Below are positions 8,550 to 62,427 of a stretch of DNA of 64,000 nt, one piece after another. Under the pieces are notes generated by a model, which had not been told where the DNA came from, did not search any database, and saw only the letters and a program-made list of their open reading frames with translations. The stretch lies in the sequence record MK250028.1. One strand, given 5' to 3'. A program made the position numbers and the translations under genes. Position 1 is the stretch's first letter, and each line of letters begins with the position of its first letter.

Positions 8550-10130
8550 TTAAATAGTTCCATCAAGTAATTTATGAACAGCGTCTTGACGCGTCTTCCG
8601 AATTTCAGCAAGTGTAAACTCTCTTACTAACTTACCATCTTCAAAAACAGTCTTCAATTCATTCTTATCTGATGCTTCCTCTTCAGGCGTTACACGATCA
8701 ACTGGTACATACTTACCATTGCCATCTTTTACAACCATAAGAAGTCCACGATGTGATTTCTTTGGCATACCACATACTGTCTTAGGATCCTTATAAATTT
8801 CTATAGCTTTACCATCAACTTTACACCATGTAGACTTACAGGCTATGCCCAAAGAATCTCTGGATCGTACATTATAAGTAAAGCTTCCTATACCTTCAAT
8901 AAGGTTAGTTGCTGCGAAACCCTTATCTTCAAGTTGAGAATATGTATCCTTTTGGCGTTTCATATTAATTGAGTCTCCATAAAGAAGTCCAATATGTGGA
9001 TCAAGAATTTTATATCCTTTTTCATTAAATGTTCCACCGAACGTATTCCAAAGAAATTCATAAGAACCCATCTTTACAAATGGATCTTCTGCTTCCGGAT
9101 CACCACAAATAATTTTAACAGGATCACCACTATCAGGACGAATTACTACACGCCCATTACGAGACATAATTTGTTCTTTATACTTAGGAACAATCTTTGT
9201 CAAGAAATACCAATAATCATAACCATCTGCAACAATTGAAATAATACCATCTGGAAATTCATCAAGCATATTCTTAAAATAAACTTCATCATTTGGCTTA
9301 CCTGTTTCATCTGTTGCATTAGAGCACTCAATAGAATGTTCAGTAGCTGGAACAGTTGCAGCTATCAATTCTTTTTTAGGATCTGCATTATAATAATACT
9401 CAATCATCTTAATTGCTGGAACTGTTTCAGAACCACAAAAAGAAGTAAGATGTGCCATACCAGAAACAATAGATGCTTCAAATGAACTCATTCCTCTCAT
9501 AGAGAAATCATGACATAGAAATGCAAGATTAGACATATCGTTAGGATTATAAAAACCAGTTTTCATAGCATGTCTAACAAGTTCACGTTTAAATACATCA
9601 GCTGTTGTTGCAGAAGTAATTGGAAGCCAAAGGACATTTGAAGTCAAAGACTCCAAATAATTTGTGAGCCAAGCAAAATCAGGATGTGTATTTGTGATTG
9701 TTAAAATAGGGCATCCGATTGGACAATATGAACCTTCAGGAAGTGCCTTAATACGAATAGGAAGATAACCAAGTTTATGCAATGCAATAATATGATCAAC
9801 TCCTACTTTCTTTGCAACTGCTTCTCCTAGAAATGTAGTTGTCAAATCTGTATAAGTTTTTCGTACAGTATCTTCATCAAGGTTAAAGAAATAATTATTA
9901 AATGTATTAATAAGATACTTCTTAATAAAATACTGAATACCAAACACAACTGCTCCCTCTGTAGCTTCCGGAAAATATTTATTACTACGAGGAGTAAAGT
10001 TACTGAAAAGTTGTGTCATTCCCTTAGGGTACATACAGTGATGACCAAGCTTGTAGCCATCTGTCATAAGCATTGCATTAAGAAGTATGTCTTCTACCAA
10101 TACATGCTGTGAATCTTTTACGTTTGTCAT
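8550..10130 (-). CDS. nadV: Nicotinamide phosphoribosyltransferase (NAMPT)
   Basis: TDGYKLGH, HDFSMRG, VPATEHS, VVIRPDSGDP, LLYGDSI, KDPKT..KKS motifs. Confidence 0.95.
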   Translation of the reverse strand: MTNVKDSQHVLVEDILLNAMLMTDGYKLGHHCMYPKGMTQLFSNFTPRSNKYFPEATEGAVVFGIQYFIKKYLINTFNNYFFNLDEDTVRKTYTDLTTTFLGEAVAKKVGVDHIIALHKLGYLPIRIKALPEGSYCPIGCPILTITNTHPDFAWLTNYLESLTSNVLWLPITSATTADVFKRELVRHAMKTGFYNPNDMSNLAFLCHDFSMRGMSSFEASIVSGMAHLTSFCGSETVPAIKMIEYYYNADPKKELIAATVPATEHSIECSNATDETGKPNDEVYFKNMLDEFPDGIISIVADGYDYWYFLTKIVPKYKEQIMSRNGRVVIRPDSGDPVKIICGDPEAEDPFVKMGSYEFLWNTFGGTFNEKGYKILDPHIGLLYGDSINMKRQKDTYSQLEDKGFAATNLIEGIGSFTYNVRSRDSLGIACKSTWCKVDGKAIEIYKDPKTVCGMPKKSHRGLLMVVKDGNGKYVPVDRVTPEEEASDKNELKTVFEDGKLVREFTLAEIRKTRQDAVHKLLDGTI

Positions 10131-10919: not shown

Positions 10920-10927
10920 CAAAGATA
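10920..10927 (-). promoter_or_regulatory. Class I (Bacteroidota host sigma-type) promoter -7 element TATCTTTG
   Basis: Matches TAnnTTTG; same ATGTATCTTTG context at 5071, 12253, 15121, 29625, 29947, 47177 (minus) and 39613, 43610 (plus), each just upstream of an ORF. Confidence 0.8.
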
Positions 10928-11108
10928 CATGTTTTATTTCAAATAAAAAAATATTAGAAGAAAAAATTAAATATTTTCTCTTAAAAATTTATCGATAAGT
11001 TTTTTAACACTATTACATTTATATTGTGTTTCTACATAACTACCTGTCCAATCAGTATGAACATGAAAATTCTCAAGAAACCAGTTTGCAATCTTTTCTT
11101 TATCCATA

Positions 11109-11408
11109 TCAATAATCTTCTGCATCTCGTAAAACTCTCATATTCTTTAAATCATTAATGAGTTTTTCACACTCTTTTAACAATACATATATAGTAGAAA
11201 TAATTATCACTATAATAAATAATAATATTCCTAATGCTATATAAAACTCTGAATCTTCATAATTAGAAATAAACTTAAAACATGTAATTATATATGTAAA
11301 AGTAAATGGTATTACTAAACATAAAATCCAATTTATTATATGTCTCCATACATGTTTCTCTATATATTCGTTTCTCTCTTTATATGATTTAAACCATTTA
11401 TTTTCCAT
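11109..11408 (-). CDS. Hypothetical membrane protein
   Basis: 99 aa with two hydrophobic segments. Confidence 0.65.
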   Translation of the reverse strand: MENKWFKSYKERNEYIEKHVWRHIINWILCLVIPFTFTYIITCFKFISNYEDSEFYIALGILLFIIVIIISTIYVLLKECEKLINDLKNMRVLRDAEDY

Positions 11409-11413
11409 ATTTC

Positions 11414-11635
11414 CTATTTCTTTTTTACATCATCAATAGTTAGAATACGTCTCTTTTTAATATAAAATTTCTTTATAGATGGAGATTCCTGTATTTCTTC
11501 AAATAATGAACATGGACTAAACCAATTATGTACAGTCTTAGCATATTCCATTGCTGTCTCTTCTGAATCGCAAACTGCAGATAATTCACGATTATATTCG
11601 TCACATGTACGATAAACTTCTACAACTTCTTTCAT
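11414..11635 (-). CDS. Hypothetical protein (ends at a TAG that may be a true stop)
   Basis: 73 aa; next gene starts 5 nt after the TAG. Confidence 0.6.
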   Translation of the reverse strand: MKEVVEVYRTCDEYNRELSAVCDSEETAMEYAKTVHNWFSPCSLFEEIQESPSIKKFYIKKRRILTIDDVKKK

Positions 11636-11654
11636 AATTATATGTAATTTAAAA

Positions 11655-11843
11655 TTAATTATTCAAATGTATATCATTAATACATAAAGGGATAAAAATA
11701 TAAAATATATTTTCTATATATAATGATAAAATCAAATTCCATAAATTATCTATAGTTAACATATTATAATACCAAAATCCCAATATAGTTAGTACGCTAC
11801 CTATGATAGAACATAAAATAGTAAATTTATATATTTGTTTCAT
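11655..11843 (-). CDS. Small membrane protein
   Basis: 62 aa, hydrophobic, ATGA overlap. Confidence 0.55.
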   Translation of the reverse strand: MKQIYKFTILCSIIGSVLTILGFWYYNMLTIDNLWNLILSLYIENIFYIFIPLCINDIHLNN

Positions 11844-12250
11844 TCTTTAATTTTTCTACCTAAAATATTTTTTAACATCCATACCAACATATTAAATGCA
11901 ACCAATAATTTATTTTCTGTATCATCAGTCTCTTCTGAATGAACTATATTATCACCTTTCATATTTTCAAGTTTCACCGAATAACTATCAATAACCATAT
12001 AATATTCTGTACTCATAGTCAAATCTTCAATACGACGGTATAAATCTTGAAGTGTATATGTATAATAACCTAATTTATACTTAACTAATTGTTCACAATA
12101 ATCTTTGTGCATATTTACATTATATTGATTTTTACCAATATAAATTAATGAAGCATCTGAAATATCAAGTCCAAGCTTCACCAATATATCCATATTATCT
12201 TTTGATAATGTAATAGTATTTTCTTTCATATATATAATTTTTATTAACAA
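11840..12250 (-). CDS. Hypothetical protein
   Basis: 136 aa ORF (true start probably the internal ATG); class I promoter at 12253-12260. Confidence 0.65.
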   Translation of the reverse strand: MLIKIIYMKENTITLSKDNMDILVKLGLDISDASLIYIGKNQYNVNMHKDYCEQLVKYKLGYYTYTLQDLYRRIEDLTMSTEYYMVIDSYSVKLENMKGDNIVHSEETDDTENKLLVAFNMLVWMLKNILGRKIKE

Positions 12251-12343
12251 TACAAAGATACATATTTTATTTTAAATAAAAAAGAGATATAACAAAATAA
12301 TCTGTTATACCTCTTATAAAATATATCTTAAAATAATAAAAAA

Positions 12344-13357
12344 TTACATAATATATTGTAAAAGCATCTTTGTTTCCTCATCAGCTTTTAATTTTGGATA
12401 TGCAGCTCTAAGTATCTGTAATACACGTGTTTCTGTCATTCCATGTTCTTCTGCAACTTGCCATGTATTCTTTTCACCACGTCCATTAATACCATAGCAA
12501 TCACATACAATTTCACCATCTCTTTCACCAAGAACTCTCTTTACATTATCTTCAAGTTCTCTTTCAAGATCAGCGTTATTAAGATTACTATCAGGGTCTT
12601 TAAATGTCCTATTAGCTGTTACATCACCTAATGTTGTTTTAGAATCATCATCATCCCCGTATGATTTATCCAAACTATTTGCACGTGTATTTGCTTCCAT
12701 TGTTTGTGCAAATGTTTCATATTTCAAATCTGGATGTTTCTTTACGAGAACATTATAAATATCATCAATATCAGGTTCATAACCATTCTTATTATATAAT
12801 TGATCCTTGATACGAGCGGCTTCACGAGCAATACTACCCATATTACGGGGAACTGCCATATGTCCACCTACTTCATCAACAGCAGTCATAATTTCTCTAC
12901 GAATATACCAAATAGCATAAGATACAAAACGTACATCTTTACCTGGCAAACTTGGATCATATGTATCTGCTGCTTGCATAAGTCCTATATTTCCATATTG
13001 AATCATATCTTCCTTTGGTATATTAATATTTTTATACTTATTGACAACAGAAATAACAAATGGAAGATTTGCGGACACCAACTTATTCTTTGCTTTTTCA
13101 ACTTCTCTCTTATTATCAGAATGTTGAATAATATCAGCAAGTTTCACTTCATCTGCATGTGATAATTGTTTTTTCTTATTAATAGCATGTAAATATGCAA
13201 TAGTAGACTTTGCTGTATTTTCATCCTGTGTAATAGCAAAATCATCATGCAAATCCATATGCATTCCATTATTAGCTTCATTGAGTTTCTTTCTAATAGT
13301 CTTAGAAACACTCTTCATGATACTCTCATATAATGCTTTCTTTTCATTTAACTTCAT
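12344..13357 (-). CDS. RNA polymerase sigma70-family factor with N-terminal Lys-rich leader
   Basis: Region 2 KLVSANLPFVISVVNKY..DMIQYGNIGLMQAADTYD..RFVSYAIWYIRREI; region 4 LGERDGEIV..YGI..TWQVAEEHGMTETRVLQI. Confidence 0.9.
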   Translation of the reverse strand: MKLNEKKALYESIMKSVSKTIRKKLNEANNGMHMDLHDDFAITQDENTAKSTIAYLHAINKKKQLSHADEVKLADIIQHSDNKREVEKAKNKLVSANLPFVISVVNKYKNINIPKEDMIQYGNIGLMQAADTYDPSLPGKDVRFVSYAIWYIRREIMTAVDEVGGHMAVPRNMGSIAREAARIKDQLYNKNGYEPDIDDIYNVLVKKHPDLKYETFAQTMEANTRANSLDKSYGDDDDSKTTLGDVTANRTFKDPDSNLNNADLERELEDNVKRVLGERDGEIVCDCYGINGRGEKNTWQVAEEHGMTETRVLQILRAAYPKLKADEETKMLLQYIM

Positions 13358-13451
13358 ATCTTGATAAAAATTATTTCAATATTTTAAATATTTATCTTAA
13401 AATAAAAATAGAGAATAGTTATCGCAACTACTCTCTATTTATAATTATCTA

Positions 13452-14009
13452 TTATTCTATATTTAATATTTGTTTAATCTTTACTATGTCATCCTGTGTT
13501 ATACCTGAATAACTATCTATTTTTATAAAGTTATCCTGTTGATATGTCATCATATCATCATCGTCATCTACTATACAATAATCTATTTTCAATTCATCAT
13601 CTTTAAATTTAAAATAATCTTCATCATAAAATTGTTTATAGTTTCGCAAATTTGTATTTCCACTATACATAAGAAAATCATGAATTTCATTTCCTCTTAT
13701 TGAGTGTTCATCATGATATTTTGGTGTTATACCTACTATATATTTAATTAAACATTTCAAATCTTTATACTTATCAAACGCATATTTTGTTGCTTCTAAT
13801 GAAATCTCTCTCCATGACGATGATATAACCAATCTTACATTATAATTCTCACATAATTGTTCTATAAGTTTTACTGCATTTTTGTCTACAAAATGATCAC
13901 CATTTTCTTCATTTATATATTTCTTTCCTTCCTTTGTAAAACACCAATTCGCATATTGTTCAGAATTCAAAACGCCGTCTATGTCTAAAAATAATATTTT
14001 TATATTCAT
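13452..14009 (-). CDS. HAD-family phosphatase (Swiss-Army-Knife RNA-repair type)
   Basis: ILFLDIDGVLNS, LVISSSWR, RGNEI, YCIVDDDDDM motifs. Confidence 0.8.
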   Translation of the reverse strand: MNIKILFLDIDGVLNSEQYANWCFTKEGKKYINEENGDHFVDKNAVKLIEQLCENYNVRLVISSSWREISLEATKYAFDKYKDLKCLIKYIVGITPKYHDEHSIRGNEIHDFLMYSGNTNLRNYKQFYDEDYFKFKDDELKIDYCIVDDDDDMMTYQQDNFIKIDSYSGITQDDIVKIKQILNIE

Positions 14010-14012
14010 TTA

Positions 14013-14336
14013 TTAATCTTCATCAAAATTATCATATATTGAAATCTTATTCTTCCTACGTTCTTTCTTAGGTTCTATACAAGGAAAACAATACTCTCCT
14101 ACATGCTTTATATATCTTTCATTCGTATATGTTGGTTCACCTTTAAAATTAAAATTCCGTTGTTCACCATATGCAATATGTTTCTTTTTCTTCCATTTAA
14201 CAACTTTATCTTTCTGTACTTCTATATCTTGTAAATCCTTATGTTTATTCTTTACTTTAAATTTTTTATCACATTCTACTACAAAACTAGATGAACCCTT
14301 ATTTACTTTATGTGTTTGATGATAACTTCTTGACAT
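14013..14336 (-). CDS. Hypothetical basic protein
   Basis: 107 aa ORF in operon. Confidence 0.6.
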   Translation of the reverse strand: MSRSYHQTHKVNKGSSSFVVECDKKFKVKNKHKDLQDIEVQKDKVVKWKKKKHIAYGEQRNFNFKGEPTYTNERYIKHVGEYCFPCIEPKKERRKNKISIYDNFDED

Positions 14337-14352
14337 AATATAAATTTTTTAT

Positions 14353-14664
14353 TTATAATCTTTCTATATTTATAACTTTATCTGCTAATAATGGTTTTAA
14401 TGTTTTATTAAACGTGTTTTCACTTATAGAAATTTTTTTATATCTTAATTTATATTCTCGTGTATTACTTCCAAAAGGATTATTTACTTCATATTTTAAT
14501 TCAGAAGCAAAATATATTGTATAATATACATTTGGTCTAACAGAATCATATGTTCTACTTATATTCTTTTCTATATATACAATGGATTTAATAGGTAAAA
14601 TTATATTACTACATTTTATATATTCTATATTATTTCCTTTACTATGATTTTTAAATTTTATCAT
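14353..14664 (-). CDS. Hypothetical protein
   Basis: 103 aa; MIKFK N-terminus shared with several other small ORFs. Confidence 0.6.
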   Translation of the reverse strand: MIKFKNHSKGNNIEYIKCSNIILPIKSIVYIEKNISRTYDSVRPNVYYTIYFASELKYEVNNPFGSNTREYKLRYKKISISENTFNKTLKPLLADKVINIERL

Positions 14665-14668
14665 TTTA

Positions 14669-15073
14669 CTAAATATATCTTAAATCATCTGCATAATCGC
14701 ACATATCTAAAAATTCATTTTGAAGTTCACTATCTATAATAGTAAATGCTCTGACTTCATCATATGATTTCTTGTCTGGAATAACATCACACCAATCTGC
14801 ATCCACATCATATACTTTATGCGTCGCTGTAGACATAACACGAATCATTGTTTTTTCTTTATATTCTTGTGTATATCCTAACGGTCCATATTCGTCAACT
14901 AATACTGTTTTCTTAAATGGCTTCATAATACATACAAGTCTTGTATTCATTTCATCTTTCTCACATGAATACATTCCTGGTATAAGCAATACTCTTTTAC
15001 CTGTTGTTACATTTATATTATATTCACAGTTACTTCTGAGAAATATCAAATCACCAATATTAAAGCACATCAT
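14669..15073 (-). CDS. Hypothetical protein
   Basis: 134 aa; ends TAG TAA; class I promoter at 15121. Confidence 0.65.
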   Translation of the reverse strand: MMCFNIGDLIFLRSNCEYNINVTTGKRVLLIPGMYSCEKDEMNTRLVCIMKPFKKTVLVDEYGPLGYTQEYKEKTMIRVMSTATHKVYDVDADWCDVIPDKKSYDEVRAFTIIDSELQNEFLDMCDYADDLRYI

Positions 15074-15255
15074 AATTCTTTATATTTTTAATTGTTTATA
15101 TTCTTATTTTATTAACAATACAAAGATACACATTATTTTTGATATAAAAAAGAAAACATAAAGAAATATCAATTTTTATAGTAAAAAACAATTAAAATTC
15201 TATAGAAATCTTATTAAATTTTATAATATTTTTTAAACAAGTATAGATGTACTGT

Positions 15256-15418: not shown

Positions 15419-15424
15419 ATATAG

Positions 15425-15498
15425 CAGGCCTGATGAGATTCGAACTCACAACAACATGATTAAAAATTCGTGTGCTCTACCAATTGAGCTACAGGCCC
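15425..15498 (-). tRNA. tRNA-Lys(TTT)-like with 8-nt anticodon loop
   Basis: GGGCCTG/CAGGCCT acceptor, GCTC-AATTGGTA-GAGC D arm, CACGA-ATTTTTAA-TCATG anticodon arm, GTGAG-TTCGAAT-CTCAT T arm; no encoded CCA. Confidence 0.8.
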
Positions 15499-35311: not shown

Positions 35312-35796
35312 NNNNNNNNNNNNNNNNNNNNNNNNNNNNNNNNNNNNNNNNNNNNNNNNNNNNNNNNNNNNNNNNNNNNNNNNNNNNNNNNNNNNNNNNN
35401 NNNNNNNNNNNNNNNNNNNNNNNNNNNNNNNNNNNNNNNNNNNNNNNNNNNNNNNNNNNNNNNNNNNNNNNNNNNNNNNNNNNNNNNNNNNNNNNNNNNN
35501 NNNNNNNNNNNNNNNNNNNNNNNNNNNNNNNNNNNNNNNNNNNNNNNNNNNNNNNNNNNNNNNNNNNNNNNNNNNNNNNNNNNNNNNNNNNNNNNNNNNN
35601 NNNNNNNNNNNNNNNNNNNNNNNNNNNNNNNNNNNNNNNNNNNNNNNNNNNNNNNNNNNNNNNNNNNNNNNNNNNNNNNNNNNNNNNNNNNNNNNNNNNN
35701 NNNNNNNNNNNNNNNNNNNNNNNNNNNNNNNNNNNNNNNNNNNNNNNNNNNNNNNNNNNNNNNNNNNNNNNNNNNNNNNNNNNNNNNNNNNNNNNN
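35312..35796. other. Assembly gap (485 N)
   Basis: Run of N at the switch from minus- to plus-strand genes. Confidence 1.
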
Positions 35797-57620: not shown

Positions 57621-59540
57621 ATGGAATATACGATAGAATCAATAAAACAAAATATAGTATGTTGGGTTGAAGACCATTTAGGATTAGATTTTACATTTAG
57701 AAAATATTAGTTGGAATCTATAATGTTTATTATTAAATCTATTCTTAATGATGATAGGGAAACTTCAATTATCGAGGCTCCAACTGGTTCAGGTAAATCA
57801 CTTATCTGTATTATATCTGCAGGTGTTTTATCAACATATTATAAGAAGTCATCATATATATTATGTTCAGATCTTTTCCTTTGGCAACAATACGCGGATT
57901 TTATAGATAAGAAATCATTAAGGGAATTCGGATATATAAAAGGTGCAATAGGAAATTATACATGCTTTGTTAATAAACAAGATTTAAGTTGTGGACGTTG
58001 CAAGTTAGCGAAAGTTTCATATGGACAATTAAAAGATAAGAATTGGCGAGAACGAAATATGTTTACATGCGTTGAGAGATGTAAATATATGCAAGATAGA
58101 TTCAGAGCTGAACGTTCAAACGTTACACTTATGACATATCAACTTTGGCTTCATCATATGAATCTAGTTAATTCAAAAGCAGCTGGTTCACATCCATTTC
58201 CGAAGAGAGATGTAATATTTTGTGATGAGTGCCATAATATTCCTGATTTGGTTCAACAATTCTGTGCGCCAACATTAAGGGATCAATCTCATGTAAATAA
58301 AATAATGGATATTCTTAATTACGCAGAGGAAAACAATATTGAGATTAAAACTATATTAAAACATATAGATCCAGAATTATATAAATATGATTATTATTTA
58401 AAGATATATGAGAAGAATAAGGATAATAGATATACAAACATGTTTGATAACTCTATTATTAAAGATAGGTTGGATATTATATTTACAGGTCTTAATTTTT
58501 ATCATGATAATGCTAAACAGATTTTAGACTTATTAAAAATGTTTCGAGATATTCTCTCTATTGTTTCTGTTGTGAATGAATCAATGGAAGATGAAATTCA
58601 ACATGAATCATTATTCAATACAAGGAATATGGATAAAGGATTAGAAACATTATCTAAGAGATTAACATGGTTTCAAACATTCGGAAATTCTTTTGAGGAC
58701 TTTATGGAAGCTATAAAGAAATCAGGAATTGAATATATGTTAATGGAAGTTAATATCAATCCAGAAACAAGAGAACGAATATTTCAGTTTAATTGTGCTA
58801 AAGAGGATTATCTTTGTAGTGAGTATCTTTTATCACATGCTAATAATAAAGTTTTACTATCAGCGACTGTTGGATCGTATCATGCTTTCGATGAGAATAT
58901 AGGGATAAAGTATACAAAACAACATGAGTCTTTTTTCTCAAAGATTCCGTCTACATTTGATTTTACACATTCACCTATATATTACATACCAAAATATAAA
59001 ATGAATTATGCCAATAAACAACATGATTTTCCGTTTATTCAACAGATGTCATGTAAGATTATAAATGCACATATTAATAACAGAGGTATAATTCATACAG
59101 GGTCATATGAGAATGCAAGATTCTTTTATAATGCATGTCCACGAGAAATTCAAAAAAGATTATTCTTATATGGAACACCAAAGCAAAAGGAAGAGATAAT
59201 GCCTGATTTTAAGAAATCATTGAATGGCATATTAGTTGGTCCAACATTAACGGAAGGTATAGATTTACCGAATGATTATTGTAGATTCATTATATTGATG
59301 AAAGTTCCATATCCTAATATAACAAGTAAGATAGTAAAGAAGAAATTAGAATTATTCCCTTTATGGTATAACAGTACGACAAGTAATGTGATAATTCAGG
59401 CTATTGGTAGAGGCGTAAGAAATGAACATGATTATTGTACAACATATATATTGGATGGGTGTTTCGGTAATCTTTATCAACAAACAAAAGATCAATATTC
59501 ACCTGAATTACAAAACAGAATAAAAGTCATATATAGTTAA
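57621..59540 (+). CDS. DinG/Rad3-like SF2 helicase
   Basis: Q-motif FRKYQ (Q encoded by TAG), EAPTGSGKS, DECH, SAT, EGIDLP, KVPYP, QAIGRGVR; Cys residues suited to an Fe-S cluster. Confidence 0.9.
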
Positions 59541-62295: not shown

Positions 62296-62427
62296 GAATT
62301 TTATTGGGTTTTACTTAATTTTTCTCAATATTTTTGAAGTTTTATTAAAGTTATAAGAATTTTAATAAAACTTCATTTTTTTATATGTGTTTATACTAGA
62401 TAAATAATAAAAATGATTTTTTAATAA

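What the first reader, a model, noticed from the sequence alone, without database searches (positions are those of the whole stretch)
12344..13400. A sigma70 that appears to be made late and pre-loaded for the next infection
Seen: the sigma gene has a class III promoter (about 13385-13395), its own terminator and the leader, and I see no class I or II promoter upstream. Inference: a sigma needed for class II promoters but expressed late makes sense if it is packaged and injected, so middle transcription could begin without phage protein synthesis. I do not know of a described virion-delivered sigma70.
Basis: inference. Interest (0 to 1): 0.75.

Follow-up and report, generated by a model that had tools for sequence, protein, structure and literature searches.

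The report
Late-made sigma factor of Lak megaphage
A giant gut phage of Prevotella (Lak) carries a full-length sigma-70-type gene that sequence evidence places among its late genes, but nothing shows the protein is packed into the virion, and a second, early sigma gene removes the reason for supposing it.

Summary
The window is Prevotella megaphage Lak-B (near-identical to MK250020.1), which reads TAG as Gln.

**Observation: confirmed.**
- ORF 12344-13357 (-) is a sigma-70-family protein with regions 1.2 to 4.2.
- It is a single-gene unit between two strong intrinsic terminators.
- ATAAATA-N4-AA lies 38 nt before the ATG. This motif sits before 68% of TAG-rich genes (portal, prohead protease) and 20% of TAG-free ones.
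- No host-type (class I) or TAAAC-N17-TATAA (class II) promoter lies in the spacer.

**New support for late expression.** Eight orthologues (down to 34% identity) keep the motif. All eight carry 1-4 in-frame TAG codons, at the late-gene frequency in Lak-A1 and at codon 5 or 6 in three lineages. Only Lak-B is TAG-free.

**Interpretation: partly supported.** "Late" holds. "Needed for class II, hence packaged" does not follow.
- The genome has an ECF-like sigma that is TAG-free, sits in an early operon and has its own class II promoter. It fits class II better.
- A gp55-like small sigma fits the T4-like late motif.

**Best reading (0.5):** last tier of a sigma relay, acting late in the same cell, regulon unknown. 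Virion delivery: about 0.12, not testable here.

The parts
13399..13436 (-). Intrinsic terminator of the upstream early operon (11-bp stem, 5-nt loop, ATTTTTATTTT). It insulates the sigma gene from the class I promoter at 15128.
   Evidence: Fold -16.9 kcal/mol, z -6.4, 0 of 200 shuffles as stable. Coordinates. Kept in Lak-A1, Lak-C1 and three other lineages, with changes that keep the pairing.
13383..13395 (-). Class III (T4-late-like) promoter core, ATAAATA-N4-AA, 38 nt before the ATG.
   Evidence: Weight-matrix score 14.7 bits; no control window and 2 of 5000 shuffles reach it. The motif class goes with TAG-rich genes. It is present 32-43 nt before the ATG in all eight orthologues.
13358..13382 (-). 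Short A/T-rich leader between the inferred start site and the ATG; no stable structure.
   Evidence: Fold of 13358-13400: -2.6 kcal/mol, z -0.04.
12344..13357 (-). Sigma-70-family gene, called s1 here: 337 aa with regions 1.2, 2, 3 and 4. No in-frame TAG in Lak-B.
   Evidence: NCBIfam RpoD/RpoS models at E 1e-32 to 3e-35, below all equivalog cut-offs. phrog_351, E 6e-43. PDB RpoD/RpoS/SigA chains. Alignment with Bacteroidota sigmas.
12274..12315 (-). The sigma gene's own intrinsic terminator (15-bp stem, 4-nt loop as folded; T-run).
   Evidence: -16.8 kcal/mol, z -6.6. Coordinates. A terminator is present at the same place in five other Lak lineages, with a different sequence.
12253..12260 (-). 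Class I (host Bacteroidota sigmaA-type, TAnnTTTG) -7 box of the next gene (11840-12229). It marks the return to early-type transcription right after the sigma unit.
   Evidence: TATCTTTGTATTG occurs 8 times in the window against 0.57 expected. Class I lies before 45/211 TAG-free genes and 0/107 TAG-rich genes.
15121..15128 (-). Nearest upstream class I -7 box. It drives the four-gene operon 13452-15073 that ends at the terminator before the sigma gene.

Best explanation
The gene is a true late gene of a Lak megaphage. Its product most likely acts late in the same infected cell, as the last tier of a relay of sigma factors on the host's core RNA polymerase.

Shown from sequence:
- The gene is a single-gene unit bracketed by two strong terminators.
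- It has the same ATAAATA-N4-AA element, at the same distance from the start codon, as the portal, prohead-protease and tail-tube-like genes.
- Every lineage examined except Lak-B has 1-4 in-frame TAG codons in it.

Inferred relay:
1. Host sigmaA reads the class I promoters (TAnnTTTG). These include the operon of an ECF-like sigma, s2.
2. s2 reads class II (wA[A/G]AC[A/T]-N17-TATAA), which stands before replication, recombination and tRNA genes and before s2 itself.
3. A gp55-like small sigma, s3, reads class III, as T4 gp55 reads TATAAATA. Class III stands before virion genes and before this sigma, s1.
4. s1 can only be translated once TAG is read as Gln.

s1 keeps the aromatic residues that melt the -10 element. 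Its -35 and -12 reading positions have changed (R584E, E585T, R588L/N, Q437R in E. coli numbering). I therefore expect it to direct core polymerase to phage promoters rather than merely block it. Its regulon is not identified. The only candidates seen are the TAAAC-type class II promoters in front of TAG-containing genes.
For: Identity of the window: 100% match to Lak-B genomes over 11000-15000.

Promoter classes and their link to TAG use:
- Motif discovery and class-versus-TAG tests.
- TAG share of Gln-like codons is 1% (class I), 12% (class II) and 34% (class III) in Lak-B1.
- Lak-A1 gives 1.1%, 14% and 33%.

Gene content of the classes:
- Class III includes portal (E 7e-57), head maturation protease (E 2e-30) and a tail-tube-like gene.
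- Class II includes a DNA polymerase piece, a UvsX-like recombinase, a tRNA nucleotidyltransferase and a DNA helicase, and lies next to tRNA genes.

The s1 unit:
- The class III site scores 14.7 bits.
- Terminators on both sides.
- Orthologues in Lak-A1, Lak-C1, three further Lak lineages and three relatives at 51%, 35% and 34% identity all keep the motif 32-43 nt before the ATG. All hold 1-4 in-frame TAG; three have one at codon 5 or 6. Lak-A1 has 4 TAG among 11 Gln-like codons, 36%.

The other two sigmas:
- s2 is ECF-like, TAG-free, in a class I operon, and has its own class II promoter conserved in Lak-A1.
- s3 belongs to the gp55 family (phrog_234 E 4e-11; PDB 7d7c gp55 E 0.014; annotated late sigmas of T4-like phages).

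Conserved melting residues and the changed reading head of s1.
Against: - No fourth promoter class was found that s1 could own. The leftover upstream regions show only more class II variants.
- Class II has a primary-sigma-like layout (-35 in the TTGACA register, 17-bp spacer, TATAA).
- The split of class II into AGAC sites (TAG-free genes) and AAAC sites (genes with TAG) is borderline: p 0.008 among six tests.
- All timing is inferred from motifs and codon use. No transcript or protein data exist for this phage here.
- Borges et al. state that Lak replication genes are also mostly alternatively coded. TAG therefore shows 'after the switch', not strictly 'late'.
Confidence: 0.5

Rival explanations
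1. s1 is made late, packed into the capsid and injected with the DNA. Phage-specific promoters (class II, or even class I) can then fire before any phage protein is made.
For: - Late promoter and TAG-dependent translation are conserved.
- The unit is shielded from early read-through by a terminator.
- No late-only promoter class for s1 was found.
- Class II has a primary-sigma-like geometry.
- From my own knowledge, other phages make transcription proteins late and inject them (T4 Alt, N4 and phiKZ virion RNA polymerases). Phage G virion proteomics lists RsfA-like transcription regulators.
Against: - About 45 host-type promoters precede TAG-free genes, so host holoenzyme can start infection.
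- An early, TAG-free, self-promoted ECF-like sigma is at hand for class II.
- If an early supply of s1 were useful, an early promoter would give it. Instead the gene is locked against early expression, by a terminator and by TAG at codon 5, 6 or 45.
- There is no conserved N-terminal cleavage-type motif between Lak-A and Lak-B (read).
- In phage G the sporulation sigma was not among the virion proteins.
- The papers searched give no precedent.
Confidence: 0.12
2. s1 is mainly a competitor. Made late, it takes core RNA polymerase away from host sigmaA and from s2, shutting off host and early or middle transcription, without a sizeable regulon of its own.
For: - No promoter class can be assigned to it.
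- The strict exclusion from the early phase (terminator, TAG lock) suggests that early s1 would harm class I transcription.
Against: - The residues for -10 melting and a helix-turn-helix in region 4 are kept across relatives down to 34% identity. A mere core-binding decoy would not need them.
- From my own knowledge, phages usually achieve shut-off with small anti-sigma proteins.
Confidence: 0.15
3. s1 itself reads the ATAAATA promoters and so activates its own gene. The gp55-like protein is an accessory or has another role.
For: - s1 sits under the class it would read, as many sigma genes do.
- The ATAAATA before s3 in Lak-B1 lies in the loop of a hairpin and may not be a promoter.
Against: - The motif and its distance to the conserved AA match the T4 late promoter read by gp55, as I recall that promoter's geometry, and a gp55 homologue is present in all three Lak clades.
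- Class III has no -35 element although s1 has a full region 4.
- ATAAATA does not fit the TAnnnT pattern that primary-type sigmas read.
- With TAG early in the gene and no other promoter, the loop could not start itself.
Confidence: 0.1
4. s1 is really an early or middle protein. The ATAAATA is a chance match, and the gene is transcribed by read-through from the class I promoter at 15128.
For: - The string is common in this AT-rich DNA: 17 found against 15.8 expected in the window.
- Lak-B s1 has no TAG.
- The gene lies on the same strand as the early operon.
Against: - The site scores above all control windows.
- It is conserved in position in eight orthologues.
- A strong terminator intervenes.
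- All other lineages carry TAG codons that would truncate the protein before the code switch.
Confidence: 0.04

Closest known systems
T4 late transcription (gp55 small sigma reading TATAAATA at -10)
   Same: - The element before the sigma gene and before the virion genes is ATAAATA, with a conserved AA 4 nt downstream and no -35 element.
- The genome encodes a gp55-family protein.
   Different: - The first T of the T4 octamer is weakly kept.
- No gp33 or clamp partner was looked for.
- Here the late promoter drives a full-length sigma gene, which T4 does not have.
Sigma cascades of phages and sporulation (SPO1 gp28 then gp33/34; Bacillus sigmaF/E/G/K), recalled from my own knowledge
   Same: Each sigma gene is transcribed by the holoenzyme of the preceding tier. 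Here the early operon carries s2, and the late promoter carries s1.
   Different: - The last-tier factor is the most primary-like one, and no later promoter class is visible.
- Expression is also gated by a change of genetic code.
RpoD-like sigmas of RNA-polymerase-less 'group 2' jumbo phages (Iyer et al. 2021, PMC7824862)
   Same: A minimal gp55-type sigma and a complete RpoD-like sigma occur together in a huge phage that relies on host core polymerase. Distant homologues occur in jumbo coliphages, cyanophages and vibriophages.
   Different: - s1 is at most 30% identical to any sigma of a named phage outside the Lak group in the collection searched.
- Its temporal class and TAG gating are not mentioned for Lak in the papers I searched.
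Short (~287 aa) RpoD-like sigmas of Bacteroidota
   Same: They are the nearest cellular relatives (28-36% identity). They share the region 2.4 motif W-x-I-R-x-x-I-M.
   Different: - s1 has a 45-50 aa N-terminal extension with an acidic patch.
- It has an insertion in region 2.
- Its region 4.2 has changed (R584E, E585T, R588L), while the Bacteroidota proteins keep R-E-R-x-R-Q.
Late-made, virion-delivered transcription proteins (T4 Alt, N4 vRNAP, phiKZ vRNAP), recalled from my own knowledge
   Same: Late expression of a protein that acts on transcription.
   Different: - None of these is a sigma factor.
- Those phages either cannot use, or they modify, the host enzyme at the start. Lak has many host-type early promoters.
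- Packaging of s1 is untested.

Membership tests
Sigma-70 family | Region 2 (core binding, -10 recognition and melting) | tested here: met
   PF04542 is on record for all orthologues. TIGR02937 scores 65 bits against a cut-off of 42.9. Aromatic residues Y/F, F, Y, W, Y align with E. coli F419, F427, Y430, W433 and W434 (E. coli numbering from my own knowledge).
Sigma-70 family | Region 4 helix-turn-helix (-35 recognition, flap binding) | tested here: met
   Aligned to the end of RpoD_Cterm (profile positions 1-237 of 238) and to region 4.2 of solved RpoD/RpoS chains. PF04545 is on record for two orthologues.
Sigma-70 family | Regions 1.2 and 3 | tested here: inconclusive
   Both are aligned. 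PF04539 is only 'faint'. PF00140 appears only in the relative P0129.
Primary (group 1) sigma / RpoD equivalog | Score above the curated RpoD cut-offs, and conserved -35 reading residues R584, E585, R588 | tested here: not met
   Best score is 122 bits against cut-offs of 354-572. Region 4.2 reads E-T-R-V-L-Q where RpoD has R-E-R-I-R-Q.
T4-type late promoter | TATAAATA-like single element at -10, no -35 element, in front of virion genes | tested here: met
   ATAAATA-N4-AA lies 28-45 nt before the ATG of 62 TAG-rich genes, including portal and protease. There is no information upstream of the motif.
T4-type late promoter | Read by a gp55-family sigma, with co-activator and sliding clamp | not testable with these tools
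   A gp55 homologue is present. Its use of these promoters is inferred by homology only.
Virion-delivered transcription proteins | Protein present in purified virions | not testable with these tools
   The phage is uncultivated, I have no virion proteome for it, and no RNA runs hold this DNA.
Virion-delivered transcription proteins | Needed because the host enzyme alone cannot start the phage programme | tested here: not met
   45 of 211 TAG-free genes with a spacer have the host-type TAnnTTTG box. One such operon carries an ECF-like sigma.
Intrinsic terminators | Stable GC-containing hairpin followed by a U-run | tested here: met
   -16.9 and -16.8 kcal/mol, z -6.4 and -6.6, each followed by a T-run.

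The most novel reading that the evidence does not exclude
The sigma is made late, packed into the huge Lak capsid and injected with the DNA. A phage-specific holoenzyme would then form on host core polymerase before any phage gene is translated. This would be the first virion-delivered sigma factor. The evidence does not exclude it: the gene is late, it is locked against early expression, and no late promoter class of its own was found.
Probability: 0.12. Interest if true: 0.85.

Novelty: new variant of a known kind. Interest (0 to 1): 0.5.

Why it matters
Lak megaphages are among the largest phages of the human and animal gut. They have never been cultured, and their gene regulation is undescribed. 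The two Lak/recoding papers I searched do not mention promoters.

What this locus adds:
- Promoter class and the TAG-to-Gln code switch run in step.
- The phage carries three sigma-like factors of three different kinds.
- Its most primary-like sigma is held back until after the switch by three separate devices: a late promoter, flanking terminators and early TAG codons.

This gives a concrete, testable wiring diagram for a half-megabase phage, and a clear puzzle: what does a complete sigma do at the end of infection? If the answer were delivery in the virion, it would add a new way for phages to seize host transcription. If it is a last-tier or shut-off sigma, it extends the known sigma-cascade theme to a code-switching phage.

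Tried and rejected
**Searches that gave nothing**
- No whole genome is held for the window. I fetched the Lak-B1 record and Lak-A1 instead.
- No RNA sequencing run holds this DNA.
- PHROGs gave no family for most Lak proteins.
- Literature searches for a sigma found in virions gave no case. Phage G virions hold RsfA-like regulators, but its sporulation sigma is not listed among virion proteins.

**Tests that weakened or did not settle a point**
- The motif count alone is no more than chance in the window: 17 against 15.8. The case rests on placement.
- A search for a fourth promoter class, by k-mers and by spaced pairs in the 206 unclassified upstream regions, found only further class II variants.
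- Splitting class II into AGAC and AAAC types gave p 0.008 against TAG presence, as one of six tests. I do not rely on it.
- I considered assigning s1 to class II from its reading-head residues. The changes (Q437R, T440M, R584E, E585T, R588L/N) cannot be mapped to a motif with confidence.
- The recognition helix of s1 differs between Lak-A and Lak-B while the class II -35 element does not. The recognition helix of s2 is identical in both. This is a weak argument only.
- A T4-type L/I-x-E cleavage motif near the N-terminus is not conserved between Lak-A and Lak-B (read), so it says nothing on packaging.
Their Bacteroidota origin is inferred from one genome scan.

- No structure prediction or complex prediction was run. 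Neither would separate the hypotheses.

**Masked stretch**
- The masked stretch 35312-35796 was not filled. In my scripts I set to N the matching positions of the Lak-B1 copy and 700 bp beside each mapped flank in Lak-A1. None of these was printed or examined on its own.
Full report
**What the window is.** Positions 11000-15000 are 100% identical to five Prevotella phage Lak-B genomes and 77-78% identical to Lak-A and Lak-C. The window lies at record position +185,980 of Lak-B1 (MK250020.1, 547,991 bp). It differs from that record by a few substitutions after 41803 and an indel near 62381. Lak phages read TAG as glutamine, and TAG is concentrated in structural-gene regions (Devoto et al. 2019, PMC6784885). 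No whole genome is held for the window. I therefore fetched the unannotated Lak-B1 record and later Lak-A1, and called genes myself under code 15: 609 and 601 ORFs. The window has a masked stretch at 35312-35796. I set to N its place in the Lak-B1 copy and 700 bp beside each mapped flank in Lak-A1. None of these was printed or examined on its own.

**The gene.** ORF 12344-13357 on the minus strand gives a 337-aa protein.
- It matches RpoD/RpoS/SigA models from region 1.2 to the end of region 4.2. The best score is 122 bits, against curated cut-offs of 354-572.
- It matches phrog_351 'RNA polymerase sigma factor' and solved RpoD, RpoS and SigA chains.
- It is therefore a full-length sigma-70-family protein, but not an RpoD equivalog.
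- A search of 1.8 billion cluster representatives found a small phage clade at 51%, 35% and 34% identity. After that come mostly proteins of about 287 aa at 28-36% identity.
- One of those has its relatives in Bacteroidales, Marinilabiliales and Chitinophaga genomes. The nearest cellular relatives are thus the short RpoD-like sigmas of Bacteroidota.
- In an alignment the phage protein keeps the aromatic residues that melt the -10 element. It shares the motif W-x-I-R-x-x-I-M with the Bacteroidota proteins.
- It reads R at the place of E. coli Q437, and E-T-R-V-L-Q where RpoD and the Bacteroidota proteins read R-E-R-x-R-Q in region 4.2. E. coli numbering is from my own knowledge. Its promoter-reading head is therefore its own.

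- **Class I** is a near-invariant block, tttttATTTaAAATAAAATATGTATCTTTGTATTGTTAATAAAA.
  - Its core TATCTTTG fits the Bacteroidota sigmaA -7 consensus TAnnTTTG. I know that consensus from the literature; papers that use the term are listed.
  - It lies before 45 of 211 TAG-free genes that have a spacer, and before none of 107 genes with two or more TAG (p 2e-9).
- **Class II** is TAAAC[A/T]-N17-TATAAT.
  - There are 30 copies at spacer 17 against 1-9 at spacers 12-23. In Lak-A1 it is 70 against 7-10 with a looser pattern.
  - An iterated matrix gives 75 sites with the consensus wA[A/G]AC[A/T]ttt ... (a/g)TATAA. The C is invariant and the last T of the -10 hexamer is not conserved.
  - It precedes a DNA polymerase piece, a UvsX-like recombinase, a tRNA nucleotidyltransferase, homing endonucleases and a DNA helicase, and lies next to tRNA genes.
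- **Class III** is aATAAATA-N4-AA, 28-45 nt before the start codon, with no -35 element.
  - It lies before 73 of 107 TAG-rich genes and 42 of 211 TAG-free ones (OR 8.6, p 4e-17).
  - Its genes include the portal protein, the head maturation protease and a tail-tube-like protein.
- **TAG share.** The share of TAG among Gln-like codons rises from 1% (class I) through 12% (class II) to 34% (class III) in Lak-B1. In Lak-A1 the figures are 1.1%, 14% and 33%.

**The observation.**
- The ATAAATA before the sigma gene lies at 13395-13389, 38 nt before the ATG.
- The string itself is no commoner in the window than in shuffles: 17 against 15.8. Its weight comes from placement.
- On the matrix built from 62 TAG-rich genes it scores 14.7 bits. 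That is better than 78% of late genes and all of about 360 control windows. Only 2 of 5000 shuffles of the spacer reach it.
- A hairpin with a T-run closes the upstream four-gene operon just before it, and another closes the sigma gene (-16.9 and -16.8 kcal/mol, z about -6.5).
- The spacer holds no class I or class II promoter.
- The next class I box upstream is at 15128. Another follows directly after the sigma terminator, at 12260.

**New evidence on timing.**
- In Lak-B the gene has no TAG. Given late-gene usage this has a probability of about 0.015 for its ten Gln codons.
- That looked like an argument for early translation until I read the orthologues.
- Lak-A1 and Lak-C1 (75-76% identity) each have four in-frame TAG. 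One stands at the conserved glutamine of region 4.2.
- Three further Lak lineages have one, three and four TAG.
- Three remote relatives (51%, 35%, 34% identity, other AT-rich recoded phages) have three, two and three.
- In three lineages a TAG stands at codon 5 or 6.
- In Lak-A1, 4 of 11 Gln-like codons are TAG (36%). This is the class III figure, not that of class I or II.
- All eight orthologues keep ATAAATA 32-43 nt before the ATG, with scores of 8.3-16.1. The five Lak lineages also keep both terminators, with changes that preserve pairing.

The gene is thus held back in three ways: a late promoter, insulation from the early operon, and a need for TAG suppression. One caveat applies. Borges et al. 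note that Lak replication genes are also mostly alternatively coded. TAG alone therefore shows 'after the switch'; it is the promoter that says 'late'.

The argument was that a sigma needed for class II yet made late must be delivered in the virion. The premise is weak, because the genome has two more sigma-like genes.

- **s2** (record 339645-340580, 311 aa) is ECF-like. Its best match is SigW, and it matches phrog_1740.
  - It is TAG-free in Lak-A1 and Lak-B1, and its frame in Lak-C1 is open without stops.
  - It is the second gene of an operon with a class I promoter.
  - In both Lak-A1 and Lak-B1 it is directly preceded by TAGACA-N17-TATAAA, a class II site.
  - From general knowledge, self-promotion is the usual habit of ECF sigmas, and so is an AAC-type -35 element followed by T's.
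  - Its region 4 recognition helix is identical in Lak-A1 and Lak-B1, as is the class II -35 element. The helix of s1 differs between the two phages.
- **s3** (record 402921-403307, 128 aa, three TAG in all three clades) belongs to the T4 gp55 family.
  - Evidence: phrog_234 at E 4e-11, PDB 7d7c gp55 at E 0.014, and annotated late sigmas of T4-like phages.
  - T4 gp55 reads TATAAATA, which class III closely resembles.

The simplest wiring is: host sigmaA to class I (including s2), s2 to class II, s3 to class III (including s1). On this wiring nothing requires an injected sigma.

**What s1 does remains open.**
- I found no fourth promoter class.
- Class II does have a primary-sigma-like layout, so s1 may read part of it. 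The AAAC sites go with TAG-containing genes more often than the AGAC sites do, but only at p 0.008 among six tests.
- I favour a late role in the same cell as a promoter-directing sigma (0.5), because the melting residues and the helix-turn-helix are conserved down to 34% identity.
- A pure competitor role gets 0.15.
- Self-reading of class III gets 0.10.
- Virion delivery gets 0.12.
- An early gene with a chance motif gets 0.04.

Against delivery: the phage visibly relies on host-type promoters to begin. It also takes pains to prevent early s1, which would be pointless if early s1 were useful. For delivery: the lack of a late regulon, and known cases of late-made, injected transcription proteins (T4 Alt, N4 and phiKZ polymerases, from my own knowledge). 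I found no report of a sigma in virions. No RNA data hold this phage.

**Comparison and novelty.** Phage-encoded RpoD-like sigmas beside gp55-like ones are known in jumbo phages that lack their own polymerase (Iyer et al. 2021). Sigma cascades are also classic. What is unusual here is that the most primary-like factor sits at the bottom of the cascade and is gated by the code switch. Neither point is mentioned for Lak in the papers I searched. I rate it a new variant of a known kind, of moderate interest.

Noticed in passing
whole Lak-B1 record (L001-L011) and Lak-A1 (L040-L067); in the window e.g. class I boxes at 10927, 12260, 15128, 29632 (-) and 43610 (+): Promoter class predicts use of the recoded TAG codon. 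The TAG share of Gln-like codons is 1% (host-type class I), 12-14% (class II) and 33-34% (class III) in two genomes. The two Lak/recoding papers I searched do not mention promoters.
   Followed up: yes
Lak-B1 record 339645-340580 (+) = L014:1174-2109; Lak-A1 298376-299326 (-): A second sigma gene. It is ECF/SigW-like, TAG-free, and the second gene of a class I operon. It has its own TAGACA-N17-TATAAA promoter, conserved in Lak-A1, which looks like ECF-type self-regulation.
   Followed up: yes
Lak-B1 record 402921-403307 (+) = L022:1450-1836: A gp55-family small sigma (128 aa) with three in-frame TAG in Lak-A, Lak-B and Lak-C. The ATAAATA before it in Lak-B1 lies in the loop of a hairpin, so how this gene is first switched on is unclear.
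   Followed up: partly
window 15424-15498 (-); Lak-B1 record 344976-345048 (+): A tRNA-like gene with an irregular anticodon loop. ARAGORN calls it 'tttt', or UUA with a 3-nt insert. A regular tRNA with anticodon UUA lies elsewhere, preceded by a class II and a class III promoter. ARAGORN found no tRNA with anticodon CUA in Lak-B1, so what decodes TAG is not obvious.
   Followed up: partly
window 35312-35796: A masked stretch of 485 N. I left it untouched. The DNA on its two sides maps to two distant places in Lak-A1 (about 409.5 kb and 303.0 kb), so gene order differs there between Lak-A and Lak-B.
   Followed up: no
window 11840-12229 (-): A small gene of unknown function with a class I promoter directly follows the sigma terminator in the Lak lineages compared. 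No family was found for it. A partner of the sigma (for example an anti-sigma) is conceivable but untested.
   Followed up: no
Lak-B1 record, 74 class II sites: Class II sites with AGAC in the -35 element precede TAG-free genes almost only (16 of 17). AAAC sites precede genes with TAG in 23 of 57 cases (p 0.008, one of six tests). This may reflect two readers or two times of use.
   Followed up: partly
Lak-B1 record 242464, 267658, 357299, 513017 (gene starts); the first is window 56484: Four TAG-rich genes that lack ATAAATA share TAGATA[T/C]A[A/G]AAA about 25-30 nt before the ATG. This may be a variant late element.
   Followed up: no
window 8550-10130 (-), 13452-14009 (-), 57621-59540 (+): A nicotinamide phosphoribosyltransferase gene (phrog_448, E 6e-176). 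A HAD_SAK_2-type protein just upstream of the sigma gene. A DNA helicase (phrog_2488) behind a class II promoter.
   Followed up: partly
window 41803-64000: The window differs from the Lak-B1 record by a handful of substitutions and by an indel near 62381. It therefore comes from another, nearly identical Lak-B genome.
   Followed up: partly
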